Source: Macrostomum lignano (lineage: Eukaryota). Taken from it: DNA of 64,000 nucleotides. Location of the stretch: the NCBI GenBank assembly GCA_002269645.1, contig NIVC01001798.1, positions 124,001-188,000 on the forward strand. The letters are read 5' to 3'. Below the pieces are notes generated by a model. It saw nothing but the letters and a program-made list of their open reading frames with translations, was not told the DNA's origin and ran no database searches. The translations under genes were made by a program, and so were the position numbers. Below, one piece after another: positions 1 through 53,490 of the stretch. Position 1 is the first letter of the stretch. Each line of letters begins with the position of its first letter.

Positions 1-2958
1 CTAACTGCTTCTGTCCATCAATCTACATGTATGAAGGGCGCCTCTCTAACTGCGAATTCTGTCCATCAATCTACTTGTATGAAGGGCGCCTCTCTAACTG
101 CTTCTGTCTATCAATCTACTTGGATCAAGGGCGCCTCTCTAACTGCTTCTGTCTATCAATCTACTTGGATCAAGGGCGCCTCTCTAACTGCTTCTGTCCA
201 TCAATCTACATGTATGAAAGGCGCCTCTCTAACTGCTTCTGTCCATCAATCTACATGTATGAAGGGCGCCTCTCTAACTGCTTCTGTCCATCAATCTACA
301 TGTATGAAGGGCGCCTCTCTAACTGCTTCTGTCCATCAATCTACATGTATGAAGGGCGCCTCTCTAACTGCTTCTGTCTATCAATCTACTTGGATCAAGG
401 GCGCCTCTCTAACTGCTTCTGTCTATCAATCTACTTGGATCAAGGGCGCCTCTCTAACTGCTTCTGTCCATCAATCTACATGTATGAAGGGCGCCTCTCT
501 AACTGCGAATTCTGTCCATCAATCTACTTGTATGAAGGGCGCCTCTCTAACTGCTTCTGTCTATCAATCTACTTGGATCAAGGGCGCCTCTCTAACTGCT
601 TCTGTCTATCAATCTACTTGGATCAAGGGCGCCTCTCTAACTGCTTCTGTCTATCAATCTACATGTATGAAGGGCGCCTCTCTAACTGCTTCTGTCCATC
701 AATCTACATGTATGAAGGGCGCCTCTCTAACTGCTTCTGTCCATCAATCTACATGTATGAAGGGCGCCTCTCTAGCTGCTTCTGTCCATCAATCTACATG
801 TATGAAAGGCGCCTCTCTAACTGCTTCTGTCCATCAATCTACATGTATGAAGGGCGCCTCTCTAACTGCTTCTGTCCATCAATCTACATGTATGAAGGGC
901 GCCTCTCTAACTGCTTCTGTCCATCAATCTACATGTATGAAGGGCGCCTCTCTAACTGCTTCTGTCTATCAATCTACTTGGATCAAGGGCGCCTCTCTAA
1001 CTGCTTCTGTCTATCAATCTACTTGGATCAAGGGCGCCTCTCTAACTGCTTCTGTCTATCAATCTACTTGGATCAAGGGCGCCTCTCTAACTGCTTCTGT
1101 CCATCAATCTACATGTATGAAGGGCGCCTCTCTAACTGCGAATTCTGTCCATCAATCTACTTGTATGAAGGGCGCCTCTCTAACTGCTTCTGTCTATCAA
1201 TCTACATGTATGAATGGCGCCTCTCTAACTGCTTCTGTCTATCAATCTACTTGGATCAAGGGCGCTCTCTAACTGCTTCTGTCCATCAATCTACATGTAT
1301 GAAGGGCGCCTCTCTATCTGCTTCTGTCTATCAATCTACTTGGATCAAGGGCGCCTCTCTAACTGCTTCTGTCTATCAATCTACTTGGATCAAGGGCGCC
1401 TCTCTAACTGCTTCTGTCCATCAATCTACATGTATGAAGGGCGCCTCTCTAACTGCTTCTGTCTATCAATCTACATGTATGAAGGGCGCCTCTCTAACTG
1501 CGAATTCTGTCCATCAATCTACATGTATGAAGGGCGCCTCTCTAACTGCTTCTGTCTATCAATCTACATGTATGAAGGGCGCCTCTCTAACTGCTTCTGT
1601 CCATCAATCTACATGTATGAAGGGCGCCTCTCTAACTGCTTCTGTCTATCAATCTACTTGGATCAAGGGCGCCTCTCTAACTGCTTCCGTCCATCAATCT
1701 ACATGTATGAAGGGCGCCTCTCTAACTGCTTCCGTCCATCAATCTACATGTATGAAGGGCGCCTCTCTAACTGCTTCTGTCCATCAATCTACTTGTATGA
1801 AGGGCGCCTCTCTAACTGCTTCTGTCCTGCATCAATCTACATGTATGAAGGGCGCCTCTCTAACTGCTTCTGTCCATCAATCTACATGTATGAAGGGCGC
1901 CTCTCTAACTGCGAATTCTGTCCATCAATCTACATGTATGAATGGCGCCTCTCTAACTGCGAATTCTGTCCATCAATCTACTTGTATGAAGGGCGCCTCT
2001 CTAACTGCTTCTGTCTATCAATCTACATGTATGAATGGCGCCTCTCTAACTGCTTCTGTCTATCAATCTACATGTATGAAGGGCGCCTCTCTAACTGCTT
2101 CTGTCTATCAATCTACATGTATGAAGGGCGCCTCTCTAACTGCTTCTGTCCATCAATCTACATGTATGAAGGGCGCCTCTCTAACTGCTTCTGTCCATCA
2201 ATCTACATGTATGAATGGCGCCTCTCTAACTGCGAATTCTGTCCATCAATCTACTTGTATGAAGGGCGCCTCTCTAACTGCGAATTCTTTCCATCAATCT
2301 ACATGTATGAAGGGCGCCTCTCTAACTGCTTCTGTCTATCAATCTACTTGTATGAAGGGCGCCTCTCTAACTGTTTCTGTCTATCAATCTACATGTATGA
2401 AGGGCGCCTCTCTAACTGCTTCTGTCTATCAATCTACATGTATGAAGGGCGCCTCTCTAACTGCTTCTGTCCATCAATCTACATGTATGAATGGCGCCTC
2501 TCTAACTGCGAATTCTGTCCATCAATCTACATGTATGAAGGGCGCCTCTCTAACTGCTTCTGTCTATCAATCTACATGTATGAAGGGCGCCTCTCTAACT
2601 GCTTCTGTCTATCAATCTACATGTATGAAGGGCGCCTCTCTAACTGCTTCTGTCTATCAATCTACATGTATGAAGGGCGCCTCTCTAACTGCTTCTGTCT
2701 ATCAATCTACATGTATGAATGGCGCCTCTCTAACTGCTTCTGTCTATCAATCTACTTGGATCAAGGGCGCTCTCTAACTGCTTCTGTCCATCAATCTACA
2801 TGTATGAAGGGCGCCTCTCTAACTGTTTCTGTCCATCAATCTACATGTATGAAGGGCGCCTCTCTAACTGCTTCTGTCCATCAATCTACATGTATGAAGG
2901 GCGCCTCTCTAACTGCTTCTGTCCATCAATCTACATGTATTAAGGGCGCCTCTCTGCA
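1..2958. repeat. 45-bp tandem satellite (48-bp and GGATCAAG variants), runs off the window start
   Basis: Unit CTAACTGCTTCTGTCCATCAATCTACATGTATGAAGGGCGCCTCT repeated about 65 times; explains ORFs 27..2777, 31..1272 and 1295..3064. Confidence 0.97.
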
Positions 2959-3937
2959 TTTGTCTATTAATATATCTGGGAGTAGGCGACTCTTCACCGC
3001 CTTGTATAGTTCTCCGTCCTACCATCATATAATTTGTCAGATCTTTGAAATTTCCCCGTTCTGATAGGGCCTAGGCCTATAGCCTAGCATATATCTGTTT
3101 CTTTTCTAATAAGGGTTTTACTAAATGTATATTATTGTAGTCATATTATTAAATTTTATATTGTGCCTTTGGCTTTGCTCGTATTACTTACAGTTACAAT
3201 ACTCGTAATTGTACTTATTTACAATTAAATTAAATTAGACGTTTACTAGGCCTTTTACTCTTCAATTATACAGTAAAGCGGCAACCATTAGGCCTAGTAG
3301 GCCGCGCCTATCTTGGCCTGTCTTGTTGATTCGATCTTCTTTTCTATGTTGCAGAATTCTTAAAAGAAAATGTATATGGAATTATATGTCGCTTTTAGCT
3401 ACTGTTAGTAGAAATAAAAGCATTTAATAGGAATATTTTGTCAAAATGGAAAAATCCTCCTATGTATTTTGCATTAAAATTGGTACATTTTTAAGCAAAA
3501 AATATTTGCAATTACGTGGCTTAAATGAGTTGTTCTTTTAAAAAAAAGATCTTATTCAATGTAAGGTAGAAGAATCAAGCGAGAAATAAGTTTTTTTGGA
3601 CAATTTTTGTTCGTTCGGTTTTGAAGATTCTTCTGTTCGGTTGATGAGGGTCTCCCTAAAACACGCCCCGCACCGCCCCAGCAGCGCTACACATTATAAC
3701 TTTTTTGTCAATGCAGTGTTTGATTGCTGAGAAAACTGATTGATGTTAGTGTAAAATAATAACTATTTTAATAATTTTATATATATATATACATTTTTTA
3801 ATCAGAGCGAACATTGATACTTACCATCATTTAAATTTATCGTATGGGGGCTGCACGTGCATGCCAGCAACTTGCGTGTCAAGCAGCTTAATTTTTATTT
3901 TATTGCAAGAAATGAATTATTCTTAATAAAGTTTTAA

Positions 3938-6900
3938 ATGCTATCGACAGCTATTGCTTTAAAGCTATTAAAAGAGCACTCCTCCCAAGCCTGTGTTATC
4001 GACTCACCTGTATATAGACCCACAGAGTCCCTTTATCTGTATAAACCTAAATCGACGTCCGAGTCAGATGACTGGAAGGCGGATGGCTATTTATGGAAAG
4101 ACGGAGGACGAGACCGACTGCCGAGGTAAAAATTCTGATCATCCAGACACAATAGGTCTAAAAGCACTATTTCAAATGGTACTGAAACAGTTTCTATTAG
4201 GTTATACAGCATTTGTTTGCTGTATCTTATATATTAAATATAAAATGTAATGTAAAATTAAATGTAGAATTTTAGTAAATAGGTAAATTCTGTATACCTG
4301 TGACAAGGTTCTGCTTCCAATGATCTAGATAGATCATAGAAACATTATTTCTTGCTGCTTAATGTCAATAAAACTGGATATTTTCAGATTTTTTATTAGT
4401 AAATGTCTTATTACTAGCATTGCATTATATTTTCTTTTTTGAATAAATATTTTAAATATTGACACAATCTTTCTTTTTAATATTAATATTGGTTAACCCA
4501 TAAATACTTCATTAAAAGTCTTAAAATTGATTGTGTTAATATAGGCTTTGATAAGTTATAAAACTAATTTTAGCTCCTACAAAATAGTCTCTTGTAAATG
4601 ATAATAAGATTAATTGTTAAGGCCTGTGCATGATGTTGGTATACAATAGCTGGAGACAAAAGGTCTTTTTATTTCAATAGATAAAATGGCAGTGAAGAGT
4701 TTGTGCTTCTCTGTATGTATATTTGTAAAATTACTAAAAGCACAAGATTGAGGGGCCTAGGGAGGTGCAAAAAGGTGGTGTGGCATGATAGGCTTTGCCA
4801 ACCCCCTCCTGCCCCGACTTAGCAAGCCGACTAGCTTGGTATGCACCACCCCACCCCAGCTAGATAAGGTTGGGTGGTTTCCAGTGTGGCTGCATTGGTG
4901 TTGCCAGTTGTGTACATTCTTGCTGCCACAATTAAAGCTATTGATTTTGACTGTTCTGAATGTTTTTATGCAAATAAGCTTGTATTAGAGTGGGGCTAGA
5001 TTATTAGCAAAGTCAAAATTATTTTAGATAATATAGGTTATAGGCTTTAGTGTAGTACATGAACTAATTTAAATAAAATAAGAATATAATTTATAAACAA
5101 ATTCCTCATATAAATTCATACAAAACGTTTTTTCCATCCAAAAGTATAAAAGTTTTGTTAAAATAATTGGCATTTTGTCTCCAAAAATAATATATAAAAA
5201 TTATTTTTAGAATCAACTTATTGAAATATGCATAAATCCATTAACACATTGACATAGCCATAAGATATGCTTATAACACCAAACAAGTTGTTTCTGGTAT
5301 GTTCTTTAAGAACAATATTATGTTTTTTTTTATAAAATGCTACAGCTACATATATACAATATAAAACCTTGCGCTTTCGAATTTAATCTAGCAAATTATA
5401 ATTTTTGACAAAATTAATAATAACTTTTTAGAATACGTCCAACTCTATATAAGTACCGCTATTTGTCCAGAGACACCTCTGGACAAATGTCCCGCTTGTT
5501 CATCAGACAAGCGTATCAATTAATTAATTCTAATGGCTCTAAAGATTCAAGGTAAATATAAATTATAAAATGTTGAATAAAATCGGGTGTAGCATCCTGT
5601 TTTTGACAGTTTAATATACTAACTGCTTCTAATGTTCTTATTTCAGCAAGACACTGATCCACTATATCGGAAATCCATCAGTGCAACCACCTGCTAACAT
5701 GGTGTATCACGGAAACCGCAAGCACTGTGGAACTTTTATGCGGACTAGCCCATCGGTGCTCGGCAATCTTCGAGCCGAACTTTCGACCCTTGCTCCTTCG
5801 CAAGCATATCGACTTTATCTAGGTCAGAGCAGCAACCCAGTGCGTAATCCTCGGAATCTAAAGCAAGTCGAGAACCTTAAGAGCTCTATGCCAAATATGC
5901 TTTCAAAAGACGAAATTATGAACATTCACATTCTTGCCAATGAACTACCAGGATTCATTCGTACAATCCAGACGTTTCCTGACTTAGCTATTCCAGCTGG
6001 CTGTCCTGAGCTTCTGGACTTGCTAAATCGCATTTTATTGTTGGACGATAGGAATCAGCTATTGTCGTATGATACTGGATTTGAGATGACAAGAGCACTA
6101 GTCTCACCTCTTGTAATTCGATTACCAATTTTCATTAACAATCCGGTTTGCCCAGCCTTTTTTCTCATTCACCATCGAAAGCTCGAGGCTCGCCACAAAC
6201 TTTTGTGGCAAGAAGTGAAATCCTCGCTTCCTGCATTGGCAACTACTAATGTGGCATGCGTTATGGATGGAGAAATTGGGCTGAGAAATTCGATGGCTTC
6301 TGTCTTCCCCAATATCCGATTTTTGGGATGCTGGAACCATCTGAAGCGGGACGTCCGGTTCTGGATTCGCAAGAACGGTGGAACATCGGCTGATGAAGAC
6401 ATGATTTCAGCAGATCTACTCTCCCTGCTAGAAACAGACAGCATCGAGCAGTACAATGCCCAGTATGCAAGCTGCAAAAAAAACTGGAATCCAAGTTTTG
6501 CCGCTTATTTTGACAATCAAATTCACCCATTAATCCCTAAATTTTTTGCAAAGTGGATTCTACAATCGCACTACTGCCCAGTTACCGGTGTAACTCAGAA
6601 CCAATCAGAATCAATAAACGCAATGCTCAAGCGTGTGCTTAACTTCAAGGATGCAACGATCGATGACTGCATTGTCGGACTTTACCAAACTTCTCGATAC
6701 TACAGGAACGAAATTCTTCGTGGTTTGTGTGGCCAAGGAAACTACACACTAAAGCCGGAGTTCCAACATCTACAACAGTCGCCCGAAACTGTAACACTCT
6801 CTCCATCGTTGTCGTTAGAACAAATAGCTGCGAACATTCAACGCCGGCACTCTCAGACTTCAGCGACTCGAGAAATTCGAGAAATTGGTGCGATTAAAGT

Positions 6901-8867
6901 GACTGTCATACGTCCCAACATGAGTTTCTATGATAGCAACAGCAATGAGTCAGGTGGCACGGGGCCTTCATTGTCCAATGATGCTACTGGTACTCCTGTT
7001 CACCAGCCCGTTGGAGAATCTAGCCACAAATCTGTGCGAGTTAATGTCGATCTAGACGACAACGAACAGTCGACACGGATCAGCTTGCTTAGTGAGCAAC
7101 ATAAAGTTTCATTCAACCCTACTCTTGGTAACTTCATAGTGACTAACGTTGCCGGACGAAATAATGTTGTGACATTTAGCAACGGCGTTGCTTCGTGTTC
7201 TTGTGTCTCTGCTCAATCGTGTTCGCATATCGCAGCGGTTAGACGAAAAATTGGATTGCCCCGAGTTGCCGAGAAGCCTGTAGGAATCGGCAAAATCTTA
7301 AAAGCTTCTCGATCGAATAAGGGACGTCGACGCAAAGGATTTTCTCGAGAGGAACGCATCGAACAAAATAAGCTTTGGCGTCATGAACGTGCACATGAAT
7401 CTATAACTTGTGAGTCTGCTAACCGTAGCAATGGTGAGTTTCCACGAATACCAACAGTCAGGGGCGGATTTAGGGGGGGGGGAGCGGGGGAGCGACTGCC
7501 CCCCCCGAAACAGCTGGATGAAACATATTGCCCCCCCCCCAAAAAACCTAAGTTTGTGCCCTTTAAACTTGATTTTTCGCCCCCTACACGCATTTTTTGC
7601 GCCCCTAGCTTAAAAATTGGCGCCCCTCATACTCATGTTGCGCCACAAACTTGGACCGCCCACCTTAAATAAAATCCTAGATCCGCCACTGCCAACAGTG
7701 ATAAACGAGCCAGCCGCTCATGCTTTTGTTGATTGTTCTGATCATGTCGCCAGTTTTGTTACTGTCGAAGCTTCGGCGCTATCGACATCAGGCTATCGTC
7801 CATTCGGCCTACCCAATCGTAATGGAAAACTCTGTTGGTTCAACGCCAGTCTTCACGCAGTTGGTGCGGCATTGTCAGGGAGAAATTTTTCTGAAACAGC
7901 CGTGAATTCGTCCTTTCTTATACGACTCTTGGCCAACATTTCGAGCGGATCTGGATTCAGCGAATATTTGTACAACACTGCATTGGAAGAATGCTGTACG
8001 GCTGGTCAAATAAATACCAACGAATATAACGACTGCTTTGAATTTTTCGTGCTCATTTCTCAAAAGCTGCAGACTATTCGTCGCCAGTTTAGAATTCAGG
8101 TAATACTTCTCGTTTCTAAATTTCAAAAAGCACTTACGAGTACAGAAACTTGCTTTACTTTTTGAACGGAAACCATTTGAAACGACAATATCATAGGGAA
8201 CTAATGTAGTAAAAAGAGGCAAATACATGTAAACAAATATGAATCCAGGATCGGACACGTACAGCATAGATGGCAGTAAGAGAGTACAGGCACTTTAAAT
8301 CGATGTTTTCAATTCCGTCTCAGCTGTTTGGCTTTATTATTTTAGCTCGGCGGGTCCACCCTATGTCTCCGGTGCAATAATGCCGCGACTACTGAAAGTT
8401 TGCATGAAACATTCGTGGTGGTTCAACCAGTTGAAGGACAGCAGCTGATTCAGCTTGTGAATGCGGCACTACGACCGGACGAGTCTGATGACATCACATG
8501 CACAGCCTGTCAGACAAGTAGCTGCGTTCATAGCAGAACTCCTCAAAATGCGCCACCTCTCCTGTGCTTCGTCGTGAACAGGCTCTTGAGAAGCCAGGCA
8601 ACTATTGTCAAGAACCGAGTGGGCTTCGATTTAACGCCAGAAATTGACTATAACAATCAGCGCTATTGCCTCCAAAGTGTGATTGTGCACCTGGGAGAAC
8701 GAGTCGACGAAGGTCATTACGTCGCTTATGTATTTCCATCAAAAGGTGACATATGCTACTTGCTGGACGATCTAATGACCACAGAGCTAAGCACTTCTAC
8801 GTCTTTGCTGAAAAATATTTCGTCAGATGCTCGACTAGTTATATACAAACGTCAGCCGAAAGGTTAA
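3938..8867 (+). CDS. Spliced transposase-deubiquitinase fusion (CG-1-like DBD + MULE DDE + SWIM + USP/C19), 1013 aa once the MITE is removed; currently interrupted
   Basis: Exons 3938-4125, 5432-5551, 5647-7458 joined to 7700-8099, and 8346-8867. All introns are GT-AG with matching phases (2, 2, 0). Total 3042 nt = 1014 codons with no internal stop. Confidence 0.85.
5647..7458 (+). CDS. MULE transposase catalytic region plus SWIM zinc finger
   Basis: SYDTGF (D1), VMDGEIGLRNSMASVFPN (D2), CWNH (CxxH), TQNQSESINAMLKR (E), CSCVSAQSCSHIAAV (SWIM CxC..CxH). Confidence 0.9.
7459..7691. mobile_element. hAT-type MITE, 233 bp, inserted in the transposase exon
   Basis: TIRs CAGGGGCGGATTTAGG / CCTAGATCCGCCACTG; perfect 8-bp TSD CCAACAGT at 7451-7458 and 7692-7699. 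Confidence 0.93.
7700..8867 (+). CDS. Ubiquitin-specific protease (peptidase C19) domain, two exons
   Basis: Cys box GLPNRNGKLCWFNASLHAV; NDCFEFF (QDAxEFL-like); CLRC and CTAC zinc-finger pairs; PPLLCFVVNRL; His box YCLQSVIVHLGERVDEGHYVAYV; YLLDD. Phase-0 intron 8100-8345. Confidence 0.85.
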
Positions 8868-11800
8868 TTTTCTATCAACTCTGAAGCTACGAAACTGTTG
8901 TATTTTCGTCCTGTGGTAATAATAATTTAGCTAATTTCTAGCATAGCTCGTTTATTATATATAGCAGAGTACTGATGATTATTTTCAAATGGGCATTTAC
9001 ATTTCATAAAAAGCCCTGCAAGAAGTGGACTTTGAATAAAGAGTTGTGTGAATCTGTGAAATAGATTAAAAGAAAAATAGCTTGTAGTATATAGTATAGC
9101 AATGAGCTTGTGTTTGTATGCCTGTTTCTTGGTAAGTTTGTTTCACTAAGGTGAAAAAAGCATGTGGCAGTGCCTATTTATTGACTGATGAAACAGATTT
9201 TGGTACATTGAGTACATGATAATGTTCATGAGTATGGAGAATAGATAGGCTAGATAGGGGTGCTGAGTCAGGTATTGGGACCTGAGTGCTTTTGAACTGT
9301 CTGTTTGCATGAAAATGTTAAGGACAGTGAATTCCAAGAGTGCACAATGCACAACCATGTCATAATGGTAATGGCAATGAGATCATAGTTTAGAGGTTTT
9401 CATTTATAGCTAATCATCATATTATTATTAAATTGTTTGCTGATAAGAAAATGGCTATGTATTTACTTAAACTTTTTATGTTTAAACCTTTTCTGTTTGT
9501 ATGCTTAAAGTTATTTATATTATTAAGTGTTCAACTTACTTCATTGCTATAATGCCAACATTTATTTTACTTTCAATATAGCAAGAAAAATTTCATATAA
9601 AATGGCACTTTATGCATCAGATGTTACTATTTGTTACTTTTTTCTATTTTGTCTATTGAGAATCCATTTTGCCTATTTTGCCTACTTGTCTATTTGAGAA
9701 TAAAAAAACAATATTTTTTGCAACTTTGAACATTTTTGCCTTTTTTTCCAAATTTAAAAGAGTAAGATCTAATTAAGTGTAAATAGTCTTTTAGTTTAAT
9801 AATGTTTTTTCTTGTTTTTAAGTAAATGGCACTGTTACAACTTTTTCTGTTATAACATTTTTGAAAAGCACTTTTTTGTTCTCTTGAAATGTTAAATTCT
9901 AATATATCCCTGTTACTTTTTAATTTTTGTGTTCCCTGTTATTAGAACTTGTCCTTTTTTCAATCTGGAATATGTGCTATTTTGCTTACTGTGTATTTTT
10001 TCTAAGCCATCTAATTATATTGGTTAATATAGACTTTGAAAAAATATGCTGTTTTAATTTGTTACTATCATAAAAATGTACTTTATTACTGGCATATTGT
10101 TGAATTAATTATTTATGTTTAGTGTCTGAAAAATGAAATGAGCCAACTATAATCAATACTATATACAATCGAATAATGCATTAGACATTAAATATAAATC
10201 AAATGCAGGAGAAATAATAAAAAATAACATCAGAGATTCAGAGTAAAAAAGTGCAAGTGTAGGTGAAAAAAATTCCAGAAAATTTGGGGGCGTTAAAGAT
10301 GCAAAATCTGCCGCTAAATTAAAAAAAGGCTTGTAACAACATTCGAGTGAAATTTTGGCTATAACCTAGACCTAGGGCTAGGCTAACCAAGTTATGCTAT
10401 TAAATAGCAGATGAAATGTAGTTACAACCACTTCGTTTACTCAGCAGGCAGACGGTATTTCTTGTTGAAAGAGAACCAAAGATACATTAAGTTATTGACA
10501 CTGTTGTGGGGGCCTACGGCTTTACTTTCGCTTTGCTACGCTAGATGACTAAAGTAGCTTACCTGGACTTGTTGGTTTTCTAGTTCTTTGGTTAGATACT
10601 TGAAGCGTGTATATTGCTTGTTGGTTAGTTTAGAATTGTCTTAATGTAATTACTTTACCGTTGGCGTTAGCTTAGATATTCAGAGAGCTTCATCATGAGT
10701 GGAGCTCCTAACAAAATGACCGTGTATAAGTGTATTAGATTCAACGTATTATATAAGCACGTGTTATTTTCTATTCACGATTCAACAAACTAATGTAACA
10801 CGGTAAAGTTGAATACCTGTTGACAAGTCTAGTGCGCTTTCTGCTAAAAATTCTTTAAACTTAGGATTTTCTACTTCTAATAAAATAAATGCATTTAATT
10901 AAAATTTTTATCTTAGCATAAAACTTATTTTGCAAAGTCTTACAAACCAAATTGTTATAACGTGTAGCGCTGCTGGGGCGGTGCGGGGCGTGTTTTAGGG
11001 AGACCCGTTGATGATTCTGAAATCTGAAAACCGAACCGAACATGTAATTTGGTATCATCAACCGAACACTAGAATTTTTTGCTTAACTATACATCAGATT
11101 GGTATGTGTGTTATATTACTTTGTAGAAAATTTAACACTGAATTCAAAAAGTATTTTGTTTTGAATGTAAGTTAAAAATTGTGGTCTGTAGACCAATTCT
11201 TCTGCAGACATCCCAAATCAAGAAAAAACTCTGAAACGCGTATTTCTTTAATAATTTCTATCAATAATGCTCATTTTCTCGAGTATCTATTGAGTAGATT
11301 GTCTAAACTTTATCTCATTTTGTAGATGAGAATGTTTTCTTTCAAATGATATGGCACTTTTATAGACTCTTTAAATATATTTCCAATGAGACAGTAAAAA
11401 CGAAAGTCACTTGCATGTTCGGTTTTGAAGATCCCTTGTTCGGTTGATGAGATCTTACCCTAGGCCTAAGTAGATTTTTTGGTAGAAAAGTAATGTCATA
11501 TAGCTAGTGTAAATAACAGGTAGAAGGTAGAAAAAATTTATAAAATCAATCATATAAAACAAACATTTCACTTTAGCCAAAAGTTTTGGTATATATTAGA
11601 TGATATATAATGCCTAATATTTTAATAACATTCACCAATTAGAATCCATACCATATTGGCTTAACAACATACATACATGCGCAATCCCCTGATTTACACT
11701 AGTGTTATTTATGACAGACTAGGGCACAGTCCTATTACATGTAAATATAGTAGGCTGAGCTTGCTGAAGTTGCCAAGGCCTGAGGCCATTATATAGGCCT

Positions 11801-12761: not shown

Positions 12762-14733
12762 ATGGACGACCAATCGTCCGAGACTGTGCAGCCGCAGGCA
12801 GAGTCCGGTGCATTTTTTCTAACCAATGCCGAAAGCAACGAAAATGCGCCGACGGTACAGACGGAAGGCGAAAATAGCGACGCTGAAGAGCTTGAGGAAT
12901 CTAAGGAAGAGTTGTTGGCGTCCAACGATGATCAACAGGAGGAAGAATCCATTACAAACGACACCGCGGGTGCAGCAGAGAATCCGGAAGCAGCAGACAA
13001 CCAGGAACAACCAGAAGCTACCGAGAACCAAAATCAACCAGAAACAAACGAAGTCGCCCACGAGGACGTTGACCCGGAGGCAGACGCGAACGATATTTCA
13101 TCAACAACTGCCGACGCAAAAGATCAGCAATTGCCCGAGCGAGCTGACAGCCCTGCAAAAGAAACGGAAAAGTCTCAACCAAAAACCCAGCGAAAAAAGA
13201 AGAAGACAAAAATCGGCAAAGCCTCAAAGCCGAAAGCTGCGCTAGTTCGGCAGATTCGCTCCAAGTCTGCCGAGCCAATCGTAAAAAGCAAAACCGACAA
13301 AAAAACAAGTGTTTCCACCAAAGCCAACAAAAACGACGATAAAGCAACGATTAAAAAGAAACCGGAGCAAGAAAAGCCTCAGGCGGGCAAAGATTCAAAA
13401 ACCGAAGCGCGCCACGTGTCGTTCGAGACGCCCCGGCAAAGATCAAAGTCGGTAGTCATTCCGCCTGTCAGCAATCAGGTATATATAATAGTGTATGATT
13501 GCGTACTCTCTACTGATATAAGTAGCTTGTTTGTTTATCAACATACGCCGAACAATTTTATTATTATTTATACAGATTAAGATGGTGCAAAAATTGGCCG
13601 AACTACAGTCGCTTATTTCTAGAGACTACCAGCTGGAGGCCAGGTGAGAAGGGATCGAAAGTTACTGCTGTTTTTATTGCTTACTATGTTAGTGGCAAGA
13701 TTCAAGATTCAGATAGATAAGGCCTAATTTAGCGCTATTAAACAAGTTACGTTTGGCGCCATTAGACAGGCTTAGTAGTTTGGCGCCATTAGACAGGCTT
13801 AGTTTGGCGCCATTAGACAGGCTTAGTAGTTTGGCGCCATCAGACAGGCTTAGTTTGGCGCCATTAGACAGGCTTAGTAGTTTGGCGCCATTAGACAGGC
13901 TTAGTTTGGCGCCATTAGACAGGCTTAGTAGTTTGGCGCCATTAGACAGGCTTAGTTTGGCGCCATTAGACAGGCTTAGTAGTTTGGCGCCATTAGACAG
14001 GCTTAGTTTGGCGCCATTAGACAGGCTTAGTAGTTTGGCGCCATTAGACAGGCTTAGTAGTTTGGCGCCATTAGACAGGCTTAGTTTGGCGCCATTAGAC
14101 AGGCTTAGTTTGGCGCCATTAGACAGGCTTAGTAGTTTCGCGCCATTAGACAGGCTTAGTTTGGCGCCATTAGACAGGCTTAGTTTGGCGCCATTAGACA
14201 GGCTTAGTTTGGCGCCATCAGACAGGCTTAGTTTGGCGCCATCAGACAGGCTTAGTTTGGCGCCATTAGACAGGCTTAGTTTGGCGCCATTAGACAGGCT
14301 TAGTTTGGCGCCATTAGACAGGCTTAGTTTGGCGCCATTAGACAGGCTTAGTTTGGCGCCATCGTGCAGATAAATTCAGTTTGGCGCGATTCGGTAGGCT
14401 TATGCTTGGCGCTTAGCTATTCATTTAAGCCTCAGTCGTCCCTATTTCTCCATCAGACTTTGTTACAAACGGGGTCTCGCTGAGTCCGGCTGCTCAGCCC
14501 TTCTGCGTCGGTGGGCCCTTGAAGCCGAAGAGCAGAGGCAACGGCAGCAACAGCAGCAACAGCCTGCCGCAAGTCCCGAAGCTTCAAGACGCCAGATTGT
14601 CCGGCCGGAGACTGGCAGTAATCGACTATCAAAATTTGCTTCAACTGCAGCTTCTCCTAGAAGAGAATCCAGCAGCCGATCTGGCAGACAATCTCGGGAA
14701 CAGAATCGAAGACTGCCGCCAGTGAATGGCTGA
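12762..14733 (+). CDS. Uncharacterised 3-exon gene (~353 aa), acidic then Lys-rich disordered N-terminus, short helical core, poly-Q
   Basis: Exons 12762-13478, 13576-13643, 14457-14733; GT-AG, phases 0 and 2 consistent; no recognised domain. Confidence 0.65.
13752..14362. repeat. 24/27-bp intronic minisatellite TTTGGCGCCATTAGACAGGCTTAG(TAG)
   Basis: About 24 tandem copies; source of ORF 13753..14373. Confidence 0.96.
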
Positions 14734-14796
14734 TGCAATTTGCGGCTTGATCGGGAGCTGCGGGACTGACGGATCTTCGCCTCTGGCTAGTCACAC

Positions 14797-14937
14797 CTGT
14801 CTGTCTGCCTGCCTGTCTGTCTGTCTGTCTGTCTGTCTGTCTGCCTGCCTGTCTGTCTGCCTGCCTGTCTGTCTGTCTGTCTGTCTGTCTTAATGTCTGT
14901 CTGTTTTAATGTCTGTCTGTCTGTCTGTCTGTCTGCC

Positions 14938-14974
<37 letters not shown>

Positions 14975-15121
14975 TAATGTCTGTCTGTTTTAATGTCTGT
15001 CTGTCTGTCTGCCTGTCTGTCTGTCTGTCTGTCTGTCTTAATGTCTGTCTGTTTTAATGTCTGTCTGTCTGTCTGCCTGTCTGTCTGTCTGTCTGTCTGC
15101 CTGCCTGTCTGTCTGCCTGCC

Positions 15122-15182
<61 letters not shown>

Positions 15183-15421
15183 TAATGTCTGTCTGTTTTA
15201 ATGTCTGTCTGTCTGTCTGCCTGTCTGTCTGTCTGTCTGTCTTAATGTCTGTCTTAATGTCTGTCTGTTTTAATGTCTGTCTGTCTGTCTGCCTGTCTGT
15301 CTGTCTGTCTGTCTGTCTGTCTTAATGTCTGTCTGTTTTAATGTCTGTCTGTCTGTCTGCCTGTCTGTCTGTCTGTCTTAATGTCTGTCTGTTTTAATGT
15401 CTGTCTGTCTGTCTGTCTGCC

Positions 15422-15456
<35 letters not shown>

Positions 15457-15541
15457 ATGTATGTCCGTCTGTCTGTCCGTCTGTCTGCCTGTCTGTCTGT
15501 CTGCCTGCCTGCCTGTCCGTCTGTCTGTCTGTCTGCCTGCC

Positions 15542-15602
<61 letters not shown>

Positions 15603-15645
15603 GCCTGCCTGTCTGCCTGTCTGTCTGTCTGTCTGTCTGCCTGCC

Positions 15646-15718
<73 letters not shown>

Positions 15719-15726
15719 GCCTGTCT
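14797..15726. repeat. (TGTC)n microsatellite with CTTAATG/TTTTAATG interruptions
   Basis: Direct reading. Confidence 0.97.
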
Positions 15727-16490
15727 GCCATTGCACCTGCCTGAGTCCTTGTGCGTTATTTTTTGTTAATCGCTAAACTTATATTTTGTTGTTAAATGAG
15801 ACTCTCTACCTAATTAATTTAAATTCCAATGAAGTGCCTGCAAATTATATATGATTGAGAATCACAGATATATTTTTATTTTTACAATTGTCTGCAACAT
15901 GCAAGGAAGATTCAGTTCAGTGCACCATGCATTTCTTATCTTTGCTGCTAAACAGTGTGCCTAAAATATCAACATTAAATTATGTGTGGCTATATTTTCA
16001 CACAGCTCTAATTCACGGTCTGCCAATTAATTTCGTCTATATATTTTCTTTACGATTAGCTAAAAGTTGGTAGAATATACTGCTTAAAACTATTTATAGT
16101 AGTGCACAAAGCATGTTAAGATTTTTTCACTTCTCCAGAAAATGAAGTTTTAATTTGATTTAATTTGATTACACTACTGAATTTAATTACAAATGTATAT
16201 TTTTTCTGTGGCTGATATTGTATGTTTAATTTTAAAATTTTGGTAATACGAGTAACAAGTAAAGTCTTTGTGCTTTATTTAGAAGCATTAAATATAAAAT
16301 ATAATTCAACTATATTACGAGATGATGATTAATTCTTTATATTTTTCAGTTATAATGTATCGATTAAATCAAAACAGTCTAAATGATTTAAACTGGCCTA
16401 CGAAAATAAATAAAGCAGGCAAAGGAAAACACAGAAAAGGTCAAATATTGTGTGCAGAATATTTAGATTTCTTATCAAATGTACTTTAGT

Positions 16491-19988: not shown

Positions 19989-21299
19989 CGAGGGTCACTC
20001 AGAAAGTCTTTAGCCTGAGTAGGATCCACGAGACGTAGAAGCATGAAATTTGTCTATGGTAAAGACCAACTTTTAAAAGTATTGCAACAAAACTTTCAAA
20101 CAGAAGCAGCCACTTTTGAGTCCACTGCAGCGAGTTAAAGTCAGTTCACCCCCCTGAGTTCTTCAATTCAACAATGAAGCTGGAAAATCGCGACTTCAGA
20201 GCAATGATGTACTTGCACTTCAAGCAAGGCAAGTCGCCGGCCGAATCGTATCAAAGTTTACAGAACGTTTTTACCCATGTATGTCCTTCATACGCAACCG
20301 TCAAAAACTGGTTCGCTGAGTTTCGCCGAGGTCGAGAAAGCCTCGAAGATGAACATCGATCCGGGAGACCCTGTGACGCAGTGACTCCAGAAAATATCTG
20401 CGCTGTGTCCAGCATGATTGCCGCTGACCGGCGAGTGACCTACCAGCAGATCCAGCAGGAGATCGGTATTGGATCGGGGAGTGTGCACGCCATTCTGCAC
20501 GAACACCTTGGAGTGCGGAAGCTGGCTTCCCGGTGGATCCCCCATCAGCTGTCGGACGTGCAGAAGGACACCAGGGTGGCTTGGTGCCGATTCATGCTGC
20601 AGAAATTCGAATCTGGGACCAGCCGGCGTATCAGGGACATCCTCACGGGCGATGAGACCTGGATTTATCAATACGACCCCGAAAGCAAGCGCCAGTCAGC
20701 CATGTGGACCTTTGGAGACGAGGACAGCCCCACCAAGTTTCGACGCAGCCGGAGTGTCGGCAAGCAGATGGTGGCCTGTTTCTTCATGCGCACTGGGCAT
20801 GTGGCTTCCGTTTCACTTGAAGATCGCCAGACAGTCACCGCTGACTGGTACACAACGGTTTGCCTGCCCAAAGTCTTTTCTGCTGTGAGCCAGAGGCGCC
20901 CAAGGTGCGGAATGCGCGGGGTGCTGCTGCACCACGACAACGCCAGCGCGCACACGGCGGCTCAAACTCTGGAGTTTCTGGCTGACTGTGAGGTCCAGCT
21001 GATGACTCACCCTGCTTACAGTCCAGACCTGGCACCGTGCGACTTTTTTCTGTTTCCGAAGTGCAAGGAGATTCTGAAGGGCCAGGTCTTTTCTTCACCG
21101 GAAGAAGCTGTGAATGAGTTCAAAAACATCATCGAGGAGCTCCGGGATGAGGATTGGCGGCAGTGCTTTGACAGCTGGTTTCACAGGATGCAAGCCTGTA
21201 TCAATGCCGGTGGAGAGTATTTTGAGCACTTGTAGTCGTTTTTTAGTTCATTTGTTGCTGTTTTCGTGTTCAGGCTAAGAACTTTCTGAGTGACCCTCG
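19989..21299 (+). mobile_element. Full-length mariner transposon, 1311 bp
   Basis: 30-bp TIRs CGAGGGTCACTCAGAAAGT(CT/TC)TTAGCCTGA (28/30 match); TA TSD at 19987-19988 and 21300-21301. Confidence 0.97.
20174..21235 (+). CDS. mariner transposase (DD34D), 353 aa, intact
   Basis: N-terminal HTH, WIPHQL (WVPHEL motif), TGDETW, HHDNASAH, YSPDLAPCD with 34 residues between D2 and D3. Confidence 0.97.
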   Translation: MKLENRDFRAMMYLHFKQGKSPAESYQSLQNVFTHVCPSYATVKNWFAEFRRGRESLEDEHRSGRPCDAVTPENICAVSSMIAADRRVTYQQIQQEIGIGSGSVHAILHEHLGVRKLASRWIPHQLSDVQKDTRVAWCRFMLQKFESGTSRRIRDILTGDETWIYQYDPESKRQSAMWTFGDEDSPTKFRRSRSVGKQMVACFFMRTGHVASVSLEDRQTVTADWYTTVCLPKVFSAVSQRRPRCGMRGVLLHHDNASAHTAAQTLEFLADCEVQLMTHPAYSPDLAPCDFFLFPKCKEILKGQVFSSPEEAVNEFKNIIEELRDEDWRQCFDSWFHRMQACINAGGEYFEHL

Positions 21300-21347: not shown

Positions 21348-23524
21348 ATGCTGTGCTCTGTTCTGACTCTGCTGGTCCTCCTGACTGCTCAGGGAGGCTA
21401 TGAAGTTGAAGGTGAGAAATTCACAGGCTGTGCATTTGAGTATTGGTTGGTTTTGACTTTTGTGTGTCTGCATTTGAGCATTGGTTGGTTTTGTGTGTCT
21501 GCATTTGAGCATTGGTTGGTTTTGACTTTTGTGTCTGCATTTGAGTATTGGTTGGTTTTGACTTTTGTGTCTGCATTTGAGCATTGGTTGGTTTTGACTT
21601 TTGTGTCTGCATTTGAGTATTGGTTGGTTTTGACTTTTGTGTCTGCATTTGAGCATTGGTTGGTTTTGACTTTTGTGTGTCTGCATTTGAGTATTGGTTG
21701 GTTTTGACTTTTGTGTGTCTGCATTTGAGTATTGGTTGGTTTTGACTTTTGTGTGTCTGCATTTGAGTATTGGTTGGTTTTGACTTTTGTGTCTGCATTT
21801 GAGCATTGGTTGGTTTTGACTTTTGTGTCTGCATTTGACCATTGGTTGGTTTTGACTTTTGTGTCTGCATTTGAGTATTGGTTGGTTTTGACTTTTGTGT
21901 CTGCATTTGAGCATTGGTTGGTTTTGACTTTTGTGTCTGCATTTGAGTATTGGTTGGTTTTGACTTTTGTGTCTGCATTTGAGCATTGGTTGGTTTTGAC
22001 TTTTGTGTCTGCATTTGAGTATTGGTTGGTTTTGACTTTTGTGTCTGCATTTGAGCATTGGTTGGTTTTGACTTTTGTGTCTGCATTTGAGCATTGGTTG
22101 GTTTTGTGCGTCTGCATTTGAGCATTGGTTGGTTTTGTGTCTGCATTTGAGCATTGGTTGGTTTTGTGTCTGCATTTGAGCATTGGTTGGTTTTGTGTGT
22201 CTGCATTTGAGCATTGGTTGGTTTTGTGTGTCTGCATTTGAGCATTGGTTGGTTTTGTGTGTCTGCATTTGAGCATTAGTTGGTTTTGTGTCTGCATTTG
22301 AGCATTGGTTGGTTTTGTGTGTCTGCATTTGAGCATTGGTTGGTTTTGTGTGTCTGCATTTGAGCATTGGTTGGTTTTGTGTGTCTGCATTTGAGCATTG
22401 GTTAATTTTACGATCGCGCGTAAGCAAGCAAGCTGCCACACAGGATTTATTTTCTCATACGCATCATTACAGGTGCCTCCAAGTATAAAATTGTACCTCA
22501 GATTCCAGGTAAGTCTGATCATTCTGTTTTCTGTATTTGAATATAGAAATTAGCATCCAATTTGGGCGGAGGCAGAGTCAATGCTCAGAGCATTTGTTTT
22601 TGCTGACCTCGATCACTACGACTTATACATGTATACCGGTAGTGATAGCATCTGTGGGACTGGTTCACCATCAACTCGCACTACTGTATGCTATAAGCCT
22701 GTCTTCCAGTTTCATTAAAGTTGCTTTGCTTGGTAAATGTTGATTTGATTTATAAATGCATTTAAGAGGGGAATAATTAATTGCAAAATATTCAAAATGT
22801 GAGAGTTAATATACTTGTGATTTGATTTAATTGACTTATTGACTTATACGTACTCAACAATACAACAACAACACAATTGATTACACCTGCCCTAATGAGC
22901 AGATGTCGAACTGACAGCTCAGCCGCAGCTATTTTGTGGCGCATCTGAAGGCTGCGTACGGCTGTTCAGTCCAAGGACTGGGGGGTCGCCACGCACACCC
23001 TCAATTACCCCAGCTAATGCTGGCACCCATTTTACAGCTGTGGGTGAACTGAAGCAATGCAGAGTTCAGTGTCTTGCTCACAAGGACATAAATTGTTCCG
23101 AGTGGGTCGAGAATCGAACCCTCGACCTTTTACTCGTCAACTCATAGCAACTCATGAAAGTCAATTCATAGCCAAATTTGCACCAATTAATTTCGCTTCT
23201 TCAGCTCCCTTCAAGCAATGCTATCTCTGGTACAAATCATCGCCAGTGCTTGAAGACGAGTTGCCGAGTCTGTCTGACAAAATGAGCCAAGAGATCTGCG
23301 CCACGCAGTGCATCCAGAAAAGTACGCCGCACTACAACTACAAGTTCTTCGGTCTAGCAGATGCTTTCCGATGCTTCTGCGGTAGGTTCATCATGCAAGC
23401 CTACCGCGGACGCTACCCCCCATTTTGCAATGCTCCGTGCTTCAACGGCGTTGGCAACGAAACATGCGGCGGCGAGTACGCGATGGCGGTGTACGAGCTG
23501 GTTCCAGTTAAGAAGAAAATCTGA
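21348..23524 (+). CDS. Small secreted WSC-domain protein, ~139 aa
   Basis: Exons 21348-21411, 22473-22508, 23205-23524 (phase 1, 1). Signal peptide MLCSVLTLLVLLTAQG; WSC Cys pattern CY..MSQEIC..C..FFGL..CFCG..C..PC..CGG..VY. Confidence 0.85.
21430..22402. repeat. 36-bp intronic minisatellite TGCATTTGAGCATTGGTTGGTTTTGACTTTTGTGTC (29-38 bp variants)
   Basis: Fills most of WSC intron 1; source of ORFs 21270..22522. Confidence 0.96.
22875..23140 (-). mobile_element. tRNA-derived SINE with CORE-like domain, family A
   Basis: Minus strand GGGTTCGATTC B box, then TGTCCTTGTGAGCAAGACACTGAAC...CAGCTGTAAAATGGGT resembling the MIR CORE; second copy at 48138-48345. Confidence 0.75.

Positions 23525-33069: not shown

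Positions 33070-35564
<2,495 letters not shown>

Positions 35565-39482: not shown

Positions 39483-44768
<5,286 letters not shown>

Positions 44769-51023: not shown

Positions 51024-51097
<74 letters not shown>
50949..51097. repeat. (GATA)n, left of the 273-bp array
   Basis: Direct reading. Confidence 0.97.
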
Positions 51098-53120
<2,023 letters not shown>

Positions 53121-53490
53121 GTAGAAGAAGAAAAATCTAGGCTAAGCTAAACCGAGCGCCCTCAAAAAGGGCAATCGTCTGCAGTATGGAACTTTCGAAA
53201 GGCCAAAAGATTTCATGTGGAAAAAGTATAGATCAACTGCATGGGAACGTTCTGACTGTGGAGGTCAACAAAGATGGCACAGTGGCAGCGTAGGCGACAT
53301 CCTTGTTCCTCGGTGTTTCAACCAACACAGGACTATTCCAGACTATAGGCTATGCTAGCTTTGTCTATGGTAGACTTGTCTGACTTTGCGTTTCTGTATT
53401 TATCAAAATCAATTAAAGAATAGTTTTTAATTCAAAGCTACCCTATATACAAAGATTTTTCCACTCTGAAAGCCGGATTTGAAAAGAACT

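What the first reader, a model, noticed from the sequence alone, without database searches (positions are those of the whole stretch)
3648..11006. Mutator transposon whose transposase is fused to a catalytically intact ubiquitin-specific protease (USP/C19)
Seen: removing the MITE plus one TSD (7459-7699, 241 nt) joins GEFPRIPTV to INEPAAHAF in frame. With three phase-matched introns this gives one 1013-aa ORF between perfect TIRs/TSD. Its C-terminal third has the USP Cys box (GLPNRNGKLCWFNASL), two CxxC finger pairs, the His box (VIVHLGERVDEGHYVAYV) and LLDD, so Cys/His/Asp are all present. Established: the accessory protease best known in MULEs is the Ulp1/C48 SUMO protease (e.g. KAONASHI-type plant elements), a different fold from C19. 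Inference: the element carries its own deubiquitinase in cis, which could protect the transposase from proteasomal turnover or strip repressive ubiquitin (e.g. H2Aub) from donor or target chromatin. I cannot confirm how often such fusions have been reported.
Basis: partly seen in the sequence, partly recalled or inferred. Interest (0 to 1): 0.87.

Follow-up and report, generated by a model that had tools for sequence, protein, structure and literature searches.

The report
Mutator transposon carrying a deubiquitinase domain
A recently inserted 7.4-kb Mutator-type jumping gene encodes, once a small secondary insertion is subtracted, one 1013-residue protein that joins its transposase to a seemingly intact ubiquitin-specific protease, at the position where related elements with enough flanking DNA carry a SUMO-type (Ulp1) protease; this is a new variant of a known theme, seen here in one interrupted copy.

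Summary
Window 3648-11006 is a complete element with 45-nt perfect terminal inverted repeats and an intact 8-bp target-site duplication. Removing a hAT-like MITE plus one copy of its duplication (7459-7699) and three GT-AG introns gives one 1013-aa ORF. Domain order is CG-1-like DNA-binding domain, MULE DDE core, SWIM finger, basic patch, then a USP/C19 domain.

The USP domain passes Pfam's threshold. It keeps the Cys box, both CxxC pairs, the His box and the DD motif. Its predicted structure (pLDDT 87) matches only solved USPs at the top of a fold search.

Twenty-three homologous transposases were found and none carries a USP. Five of ten relatives' loci clearly carry Ulp1 (C48), mostly with a PHD finger, after the transposase. 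The USP therefore appears to have replaced an Ulp1-PHD module.

Protease domains of the ubiquitin/SUMO system are already known in transposons. Examples are Ulp1 in MULEs and Ginger, OTU, VTD and UCH in Helitrons, and a C19-transposase fusion in Trichomonas. I found no report of MULE plus USP.

Limits: this is a single copy, it is interrupted by the MITE, and there is no transcript or activity evidence. Function is inferred. Verdict: real, a new variant of a known kind, of moderate interest.

The parts
3640..3647 (.). Left copy of the 8-bp target-site duplication, GTTGATGA
   Evidence: Identical to 11007-11014
3648..3708 (+). Left terminal inverted repeat (perfect over 3648-3692)
   Evidence: 45/45 complementary, 61 nt at 93%, found only at the two ends
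3938..4125 (+). Exon 1: start codon and first half of the CG-1-like DNA-binding domain
   Evidence: Pfam CG-1 scores 18.8 bits (E=0.0014) on aa 8-56. Aligns with the N-termini of P0001 and P0005
4126..5431 (+). Intron 1 (GT-AG, 1306 nt, AT-rich)
   Evidence: Intronless relatives are colinear across the junction LPR|IRP. GC is 0.22-0.25 over most of it, against 0.42-0.47 in exons
5432..5551 (+). Exon 2
5552..5646 (+). Intron 2 (GT-AG, 95 nt)
   Evidence: The junction DS|SKTLIHYIG restores the family motif TLIHYIG
5647..7458 (+). Exon 3, 5' part. It holds the MULE DDE core (D245 at 6071-6073, D310 at 6266-6268, CWNH at 6329-6340, E424 at 6608-6610), the SWIM finger (7196-7228) and a basic NLS-like patch (7301-7393)
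   Evidence: Invariant columns in alignment A1; coordinates. Pfam Transposase_mut and MULE hits are below threshold here but above threshold in homologue P0005
7459..7699 (.). Secondary insertion: a 233-bp hAT-like MITE (7459-7691) plus the duplicated 8-bp target CCAACAGT (7692-7699). It interrupts the linker at codon 707
   Evidence: With it in place the ORF ends at a TAA inside the MITE, after 777 aa
7700..8099 (+). Exon 3, 3' part: linker and the N-terminal half of the USP domain (oxyanion Asn746 at 7815-7817, catalytic Cys752 at 7833-7835). It contains no Met codon
8100..8345 (+). Intron 3 (GT-AG, 246 nt) inside the USP domain
   Evidence: The spliced product aligns without a gap to 13 USPs across RIQ|LGG, and the Pfam UCH match 811-1002 spans the junction
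8346..8867 (+). Exon 4: C-terminal half of the USP domain (zinc-ribbon Cys847/850/892/895, His box with His964 at 8715-8717, Asp981-982 at 8766-8771) and the stop codon
8868..10945 (+). 3' non-coding part of the element (AT-rich, no ORF with homologues, no Ulp1/PHD remnant)
10946..11006 (-). Right terminal inverted repeat
11007..11014 (.). Right copy of the target-site duplication, GTTGATGA

Best explanation
This is an autonomous Mutator-like element from an animal-type MULE lineage. In that lineage the transposase has a CG-1/WRKY-like DNA-binding domain, a DDE core and a SWIM finger, and is often followed by a C-terminal protease for ubiquitin-like modifiers. In the relatives where a module could be seen, it is Ulp1 (C48), mostly with a PHD finger. 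In this element it is a complete USP/C19 domain, probably captured as genomic DNA because it keeps an intron. The intended product is a single 1013-aa polypeptide. The DDE part cuts and pastes the element. The USP part, tethered to it, removes ubiquitin or a ubiquitin-like modifier from the transposase itself or from chromatin and repair proteins at the donor or target site. That would stabilise the transposase or counter modifier-dependent silencing or repair control (inferred). The element inserted recently, since its TIR tips and TSD are perfect. This copy was then hit by a hAT-like MITE in the linker between the SWIM finger and the USP. As it stands it can only encode a 777-aa transposase with a MITE-derived tail and no protease. 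Shown: anatomy, reading frame, motif integrity and homology. Inferred: splicing, translation as a fusion, enzymatic activity, substrate and benefit to the element.
For: The element's ends and TSD are intact. The ORF is 1013 aa after subtracting the MITE. D245, D310, E424, CWNH and the SWIM C/C/C/H are invariant across six family members. Homologue P0005 passes Pfam's MULE (31.7 bits, cut-off 27.6) and Transposase_mut (25.3 bits, cut-off 21) thresholds. Pfam UCH scores 39.2 bits against a cut-off of 23.9. All 13 long proteins scanned from the 165 USP-domain hits are UCH proteins. The Cys box, NDCFEF box, two CxxC pairs, the GHY His box and the DD motif align with 13 USPs, with no gap at the intron junction. 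The AlphaFold2 model has pLDDT 87 and pTM 0.85, and the top 50 PDB fold matches are all USPs (USP30, USP18, USP35, USP21, USP12, USP2, USP7; E down to 4e-21, TM 0.74). The USP exon has no ATG, so it cannot be translated on its own. The nearest-type relative, P0002, has an uninterrupted ORF that aligns across the MITE insertion point: PRIPTV|INEPAAHAFV against PGVPTVVPEPSAAKIV, E=4e-4. Exon GC is uniform at 0.42-0.47 through the transposase and USP parts. Five relatives' loci carry Ulp1, and four of them PHD, after the transposase. Published precedents exist for transposon-borne proteases of the ubiquitin/SUMO system, some with measured deubiquitinase activity (PMC2836005, PMC9741609, PMC11417382).
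Against: There is only one copy, and it is interrupted, so the fusion is a reconstruction. No other copy, transcript or protein with MULE plus USP was found in any searchable collection. The window protein's own Pfam MULE and Transposase_mut scores are below threshold. The USP domain is only 25-33% identical to its nearest relatives, so substrate specificity cannot be read from homology. The structure prediction used an alignment of USPs, which favours a USP fold. A freshly captured host fragment would also look intact.
Confidence: 0.65

Rival explanations
1. Passenger capture. The USP is a recently transduplicated host gene fragment, as in Pack-MULEs. It happens to lie in frame but does nothing for the element.
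For: MULEs are known for capturing host DNA (PMC6431247, PMC8277862). The USP keeps an intron, as expected for DNA-level capture. No other family member has a USP. It is seen in a single copy.
Against: The whole catalytic domain is present with every motif intact over 306 codons. It lacks its own start codon and continues the transposase frame exactly. It occupies the slot that Ulp1 fills in relatives. Its GC content matches the transposase exons. Pack-MULE captures are usually fragments and sit in non-autonomous elements.
Confidence: 0.15
2. The architecture is the same, but the domain is not a deubiquitinase. It is a USP-fold protease for SUMO or another ubiquitin-like modifier, as USPL1 is for SUMO and USP18 is for ISG15. 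It would then be a like-for-like functional replacement of Ulp1.
For: It replaces a SUMO-type protease in the same position. USP18, an ISG15-specific enzyme, is among the best fold matches. The conserved QQD-x-EF box reads NEYNDCFEF here. The domain is very divergent, at most 33% identical to any representative.
Against: There was no Pfam hit to Peptidase_C98 (USPL1-like) at E<=1. The best fold matches are mostly ubiquitin-specific USPs. Most USPs act on ubiquitin (established knowledge).
Confidence: 0.15
3. Two products rather than a fusion. The USP exons are expressed separately from an internal promoter or by alternative splicing, like a second gene of the element (compare mudrB).
For: Several MULEs carry a second ORF (PMC6446971). 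In relatives L003, L005 and L006 the Ulp1-PHD part lies in separate ORFs downstream of the transposase ORF. No transcript data exist for this element.
Against: There is no Met codon anywhere in 7700-8099, and the only in-frame upstream sequence is the transposase. P0005 and the Ptychodera locus L007 have the protease in the same continuous ORF as the transposase C-terminus. P0002 reads through the equivalent linker.
Confidence: 0.07
4. Chance or artefact: the gene model is an over-reading of unrelated ORF pieces, or a mis-assembly.
For: The window is extremely repeat-rich, and the model needs one deletion and three introns.
Against: Independent homology supports every junction. The TIRs and TSD enclose the whole unit. 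Domain scores are far beyond chance.
Confidence: 0.02

Closest known systems
Ulp1 (C48)-carrying Mutator elements: hydra and lancelet MuDR families with Ulp1+PHD, and Arabidopsis, melon, rice and maize MULEs such as KAONASHI and VANDAL20 (PMC2836005 and references therein)
   Same: The transposase family is the same (28-39% identity to relatives that carry Ulp1). So is the order: DNA-binding domain, DDE, SWIM, basic patch, then a cysteine protease for a ubiquitin-like modifier. Both have TIRs and an 8-bp TSD.
   Different: The protease is USP/C19, a different papain-like family, instead of Ulp1/C48. There is no PHD finger and no Ulp1 or PHD remnant in the element. The DDE motifs are of a distinct subtype, SYDTGF / DGE rather than SYDTTF / VTDxE, shared only with P0002.
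Helitron-like elements with OTU, VTD or UCH domains (PMC9741609; HELIANO, PMC11417382)
   Same: Both are transposon proteins with a fused cysteine protease domain of the deubiquitinase classes. UCH (PF00443) is itself reported as enriched in HLE2 subgroups c and d. Two of the nearest USP representatives are Helitron-type proteins: P0076 and P0151. VTD domains from such elements are active deubiquitinases in vitro.
   Different: Helitrons use a rolling-circle RepHel enzyme, not a DDE transposase. The Helitron USPs are no closer to this domain than cellular USPs (E about 1e-4).
Trichomonas vaginalis protein XP_001314237.1: transposase_11 (IS4/IS5-like DDE) fused to Peptidase C19 (noted in PMC2836005)
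   Same: A cut-and-paste DDE transposase fused to a USP/C19 domain.
   Different: The transposase superfamily and the host kingdom differ. I did not fetch or compare this protein.
Ginger1 transposons (PMC2836005)
   Same: The transposase carries a C-terminal OTU domain, or Ulp1 with or without PHD. Alternative protease modules occur within one transposon family, which parallels the Ulp1-to-USP swap proposed here.
   Different: Ginger1 has an integrase-like DDE and a different TSD, and no USP has been reported.

Membership tests
Mutator/MULE superfamily | DDE catalytic triad with the C/D-x2-H motif between the second D and the E | tested here: met
   D245, D310, C331-W-N-H334 and E424 are invariant in the six-sequence family alignment
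Mutator/MULE superfamily | Pfam MULE (PF10551) or Transposase_mut (PF00872) above the curated cut-off | tested here: inconclusive
   The window protein scores 15.1 bits (cut-off 27.6) and 16.5 bits (cut-off 21), both below threshold. Homologue P0005 (E=1e-47 to the window protein) scores 31.7 and 25.3, both above. Most of the other family members have a precomputed PF10551 hit
Mutator/MULE superfamily | TIRs flanked by an 8-11 bp target-site duplication | tested here: met
   45-nt perfect TIRs and the 8-bp TSD GTTGATGA. The 8-11 bp range is from PMC6446971
Mutator/MULE superfamily | C-terminal SWIM zinc finger (CxCxnCxH), common but not universal | tested here: inconclusive
   The motif CSCVSAQSCSH is present and invariant. 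Pfam SWIM gave no hit for the window at E<=1. P0005 scores 19.0 bits against a cut-off of 19.6
USP / peptidase C19 (Pfam UCH, PF00443) | Profile match above the curated cut-off | tested here: met
   39.2 bits against a cut-off of 23.9, covering aa 811-1002. Several representative hits extend the alignment through the Cys box, for example query 28-262 and 30-300
USP / peptidase C19 (Pfam UCH, PF00443) | Cys box with the catalytic Cys and upstream oxyanion Asn; His box (GHY); Asp/Asn after the His box | tested here: met
   GLPN746RNGKLC752WFNASL, VIVHLGERVDEGH964Y and LLD981D982 align with the corresponding columns of 13 and of 43 USPs. His257, Gly256 and Tyr258 (domain numbering) are invariant and Asp275 is near-invariant
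USP / peptidase C19 (Pfam UCH, PF00443) | Fingers-palm-thumb fold with a zinc ribbon in the fingers | tested here: met
   AlphaFold2 pLDDT 87 and pTM 0.85. The best 50 PDB matches are all USPs, with TM up to 0.74-0.79. Four zinc-ribbon Cys are present. This is a prediction made with a USP alignment, not an experiment
USP / peptidase C19 (Pfam UCH, PF00443) | Isopeptidase activity on ubiquitin conjugates | not testable with these tools
   Needs a recombinant enzyme assay
Ulp1-carrying MULEs (KAONASHI-like, hydra/lancelet MuDR-Ulp1-PHD) | Peptidase_C48 domain encoded within the element | tested here: not met
   The model has no C48 hit. tblastn of four relatives' Ulp1-PHD regions against the window found nothing within 3648-11006 apart from a minus-strand match at E=4.5, which is noise. 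The relatives do have it
Pack-MULE | Non-autonomous element carrying host gene fragments and no transposase | tested here: not met
   The element encodes a full-length transposase with an intact DDE triad, and the captured domain is complete

The most novel reading that the evidence does not exclude
Within one MULE lineage, a SUMO-type protease module (Ulp1-PHD) has been exchanged for a USP-fold protease. That would imply the element needs some enzyme that removes a ubiquitin-like mark, not one particular enzyme. Together with OTU, VTD and UCH in Helitrons and OTU or Ulp1 in Ginger, it would point to a general, convergently acquired transposon counter-measure against ubiquitin- or SUMO-dependent silencing, degradation or repair control. 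This small DDE element could then serve as a tractable system for identifying the target.
Probability: 0.2. Interest if true: 0.75.

Novelty: new variant of a known kind. Interest (0 to 1): 0.5.

Why it matters
It has been an open question since at least 2006-2010 why so many unrelated DNA transposons carry proteases of the ubiquitin/SUMO system. Only the Helitron VTD domains have been shown to be active enzymes.

A MULE in which USP stands where Ulp1 stands in related elements is a natural domain swap. If both versions support transposition, the required activity is removal of a ubiquitin-like modifier near the transposase, and the two enzymes' shared substrates narrow the search. MULE transposition can be reconstituted in yeast (Muta1, PMC5499845), so the idea could be tested with a catalytic-Cys mutant.

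If instead the USP is a dead-end passenger in a single broken copy, the finding is a curiosity of gene capture.

Tried and rejected
- **USP domain, word-indexed protein search:** no hit at E<=0.01. The exhaustive representative search then found only distant USPs, at most 33% identical.
- **MULE domain in the nearest USPs:** Pfam on 13 long hits and a family HMM against all 150 representatives found none. Two were Helitron-type proteins.
- **USP in the transposase family:** none in 23 proteins (precomputed Pfam; USP HMM) and none in six-frame ORFs of 10 relatives' loci.
- **Other copies of the element:**
  - The 22-nt TIR tip found nothing in JGI metagenome contigs.
  - The family alignment found no confirmed relative in metagenome contigs or viral contigs.
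  - An exact-product lookup of the 663-aa window ORF found nothing on record.
  - The host genome is apparently not in the searchable collections, so copy number remains unknown.
- **Decayed Ulp1/PHD inside the element:** none found.
- **Single-sequence search of the USP domain against PDB sequences:** only marginal hits, E>0.1. The fold search was needed.
- **Literature:** no paper in the held library combines Mutator/MuDR/MULE with USP, UCH or C19 as an element-encoded domain. The MULE surveys PMC6446971 and PMC13359780 do not mention proteases.
- **Other long ORFs in the window as host genes:** rejected. They lie in mini- and microsatellite arrays.
Full report

Yes. The region 3648-11006 (7,359 bp) is bounded by inverted repeats that are perfectly complementary over 45 nt and 93% complementary over 61 nt. 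It is flanked by identical 8-bp direct repeats, GTTGATGA. The 32-nt terminal sequence occurs nowhere else in the window, and shuffles gave zero matches.

A 233-bp element lies at 7459-7691. It has hAT-like ends, CAGGGGCGGATTTAGG and CAGTGGCGGATCTAGG, and its own 8-bp duplication, CCAACAGT, at 7451-7458 and 7692-7699.

The reconstructed coding sequence removes 7459-7699 and joins these exons:
- 3938-4125
- 5432-5551
- 5647-7458 plus 7700-8099
- 8346-8867

This gives 3,042 nt, or 1013 codons plus a stop, with no internal stop. All three introns are GT-AG with AT-rich interiors. With the MITE in place, the frame runs into it and ends after 777 residues. This copy therefore cannot make the fusion.

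**2. Are the junctions supported by anything beyond an open frame?**

- **Introns 1 and 2.** Relatives that have no intron there (P0001, P0005) align colinearly across LPR|IRP and DS|SKTLIHYIG. The second junction restores the family motif TLIHYIG.
- **Intron 3.** The Pfam UCH match (residues 811-1002) spans it. An alignment with 13 USPs shows no gap at RIQ|LGG, just before the first CxxC.
- **The MITE joint.** The relative with the most similar motif style, P0002, has an uninterrupted ORF whose C-terminal part aligns across the joint. PRIPTV|INEPAAHAFV matches PGVPTVVPEPSAAKIV with E=4e-4 in a pairwise comparison. This is weak but independent evidence.
- **No separate start.** Exon segment 7700-8099 contains no Met codon. 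The USP domain can only be translated as a continuation of the transposase.

**3. What is the transposase?**

Pfam gives only sub-threshold hits for the window protein: Transposase_mut 16.5 bits and MULE 15.1 bits. However, the protein has clear homologues. Five were found by a single-sequence search (E 1e-47 to 5e-82) and 23 by a profile search. They come from large eukaryotic contigs and include an annotated protein of the hemichordate Ptychodera flava.

Most of these homologues carry a precomputed PF10551 hit. P0005 passes the MULE and Transposase_mut thresholds on rescanning.

The following are invariant in the family alignment:
- D245 (LLSYDT), D310 and E424 (NQSES)
- the CWNH motif
- the SWIM-type C620, C622, C628 and H630

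With an 8-bp TSD, inside the 8-11 bp range given for MULEs (PMC6446971), the element is a MULE. The window protein and P0002 share a distinct motif subtype, SYDTGF / DGE. All other members have SYDTTF / VTDxE.

The N-terminus is CG-1-like. The Ptychodera relative scores 30.9 bits against a cut-off of 23.5 over almost the whole profile. The window scores 18.8 bits.

**4. What is the C-terminal domain?**

Several lines of evidence identify it as a USP:
- Pfam UCH (PF00443) scores 39.2 bits against a cut-off of 23.9.
- An exhaustive search of 1.84 billion representatives found 165 hits at E<=1e-3. All are distant (25-33% identity), and all 13 long ones scanned are UCH proteins.
- Alignments place these motifs in the canonical columns:
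  - GLPN746-RNGKL-C752-WFNASL
  - the NDCFEF box
  - CLRC and CTAC (the zinc ribbon)
  - PPLLCFVVNR
  - YCLQSVIVHLGERVDEGH964YVAYV
  - LLD981D982
- AlphaFold2, run with a 44-sequence alignment, gives pLDDT 87 and pTM 0.85. Only the first ~27 linker residues are disordered.
- Foldseek against the PDB returns USPs for all of the top 50 matches: USP30, USP18, USP35, USP21, USP12, USP46, USP2 and USP7. E-values reach 4e-21 and TM is about 0.7.

The domain is therefore a USP with all catalytic and structural residues in place. Activity and substrate cannot be determined here.

**5. What do the relatives carry at that position?**

Ulp1, usually with a PHD finger.
- P0005 is a single ORF with MULE, SWIM, Peptidase_C48 (27.5 bits, cut-off 20.7) and a PHD-like end.
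- In the Ptychodera locus L007, a 500-aa ORF continues from the transposase C-terminus. It has C48 at 60.8 bits and a PHD-like end.
- L003, L005 and L006 have Ulp1+PHD ORFs 1-2 kb downstream on the same strand.
- L008 has a weak match.
- Nothing was detected in L009 or L010, and the contigs of L001 and L004 are too short to tell.

None of the 23 proteins or 10 loci has a USP. The window element has no Ulp1 or PHD remnant. The simplest reading is a module exchange, with USP taking the place of Ulp1-PHD. The intron inside the USP suggests it was acquired as genomic DNA.

**6. How does it most likely work?**

- **Shown:** an intact-looking DDE transposase and an intact-looking USP are encoded in one frame between fresh TIRs.
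- **Inferred:** the product is a bifunctional protein. The CG-1-like domain and SWIM finger bring it to the element ends, the DDE core performs cut-and-paste, and the tethered USP removes ubiquitin or a ubiquitin-like modifier locally.

Candidate targets are the transposase itself (escape from proteasomal turnover) or modified chromatin and repair factors at the break. Both ideas have been raised for Ulp1, OTU and VTD domains of other transposons (PMC2836005, PMC9741609).

Because USP replaces a SUMO-type enzyme, a specificity for a modifier other than ubiquitin cannot be excluded. USP18, which is ISG15-specific, is among the best fold matches. I rate the architecture as real at about 0.65-0.7. 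Any specific target is much less certain.

**7. Comparison with what is known**

Transposon-borne proteases of this system are well documented:
- Ulp1 occurs in MULEs of hydra, lancelet and plants, and Ulp1 or OTU occurs in Ginger1 (PMC2836005).
- OTU and VTD occur in Helitrons and Helentrons, with VTD activity shown in vitro (PMC9741609).
- UCH (PF00443) is enriched in two HLE2 Helitron subgroups (PMC11417382). My own search found UCH with Helitron_like_N and PIF1 with UCH among the nearest USPs.
- A C19 plus transposase_11 fusion in Trichomonas was noted in 2010 (PMC2836005).

I found no report of USP in a Mutator element. The finding is thus a new variant of a known kind, not a new kind.

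**8. Verdict**

The functional proposals remain hypotheses.

Interest is moderate (0.5). The Ulp1-to-USP swap within one transposase family is a useful natural experiment. Against that, there is a single MITE-disrupted copy, no expression or copy-number evidence, and published precedents for USP domains in other transposon superfamilies.

Noticed in passing
window 3938-5692 (aa 1-118); L007 8001-8400 (P0173 N-terminus): The N-terminal DNA-binding region of this MULE family is homologous to the CG-1 domain of CAMTA transcription factors (PF03859). The Ptychodera relative scores 30.9 bits against a cut-off of 23.5 over profile positions 9-114 of 116. The window scores 18.8 bits (E=0.0014). One relative weakly hits WRKY instead. 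This may bear on the origin of CG-1 or its link to the WRKY-type domains of other MULEs.
   Followed up: partly
window 7410-7439 and 7690-7699: Two GTGAGT donor-like sites lie just upstream of the MITE, at 7410 and 7434, and the duplicated target ends in CAG at 7696-7698. Splicing 7434..7698 would remove the MITE plus 24 nt in frame and give a 1005-aa fusion lacking GEFPRIPT. The acceptor has a poor pyrimidine tract, so this is speculative, but the broken copy might still yield some fusion protein.
   Followed up: partly
window 3605-3647 and 11015-11078: The insertion site is itself palindromic. 3624-3647 pairs with 11055-11078 (88%), and by eye a GTTCGTTCGGTTTT stretch just left of the element looks like the reverse complement of an AAAACCGAACCGAAC stretch just right of it. 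The MULE seems to have landed near the centre of a small foldback or MITE-like sequence.
   Followed up: no
window 7459-7691: A 233-bp hAT-like MITE with an 8-bp TSD and CAGGGGCGG... ends, containing long G and C runs. There is only one copy in the window, and its family was not identified.
   Followed up: no
window 1-2955, 13720-15727, 21431-22403, 27655-28716, 33070-35564, 39483-44768, 51090-53125 and others: The window is dominated by mini- and microsatellite arrays, for example 65 copies of a 45-nt unit and about 1,325 copies of TAGA. Interspersed 255-nt and 273-nt repeats also occur. The long ORFs listed there are repeat artefacts. The context looks heterochromatic or subtelomeric.
   Followed up: partly
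window 20174-21235: An ORF of 353 aa with a Mos1-type HTH_48 domain (above threshold) and partial mariner/DDE_3 transposase domains. It is a mariner-family transposase remnant or copy.
   Followed up: no
P0006, P0007, P0008, P0010, P0013, P0051, P0123 (representative-search hits): The best-scoring relatives of the USP domain are predicted proteins with 3-10 tandem UCH domains, up to 3,205 aa. These are either merged tandem gene arrays or a lineage-specific USP expansion. Their source organisms are unknown.
   Followed up: no
window 4700-4900 (inside intron 1): A GC-rich segment (GC 0.43) lies within an otherwise 22-25% GC intron of unusual length (1,306 nt). It may be another nested insertion.
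   Followed up: no
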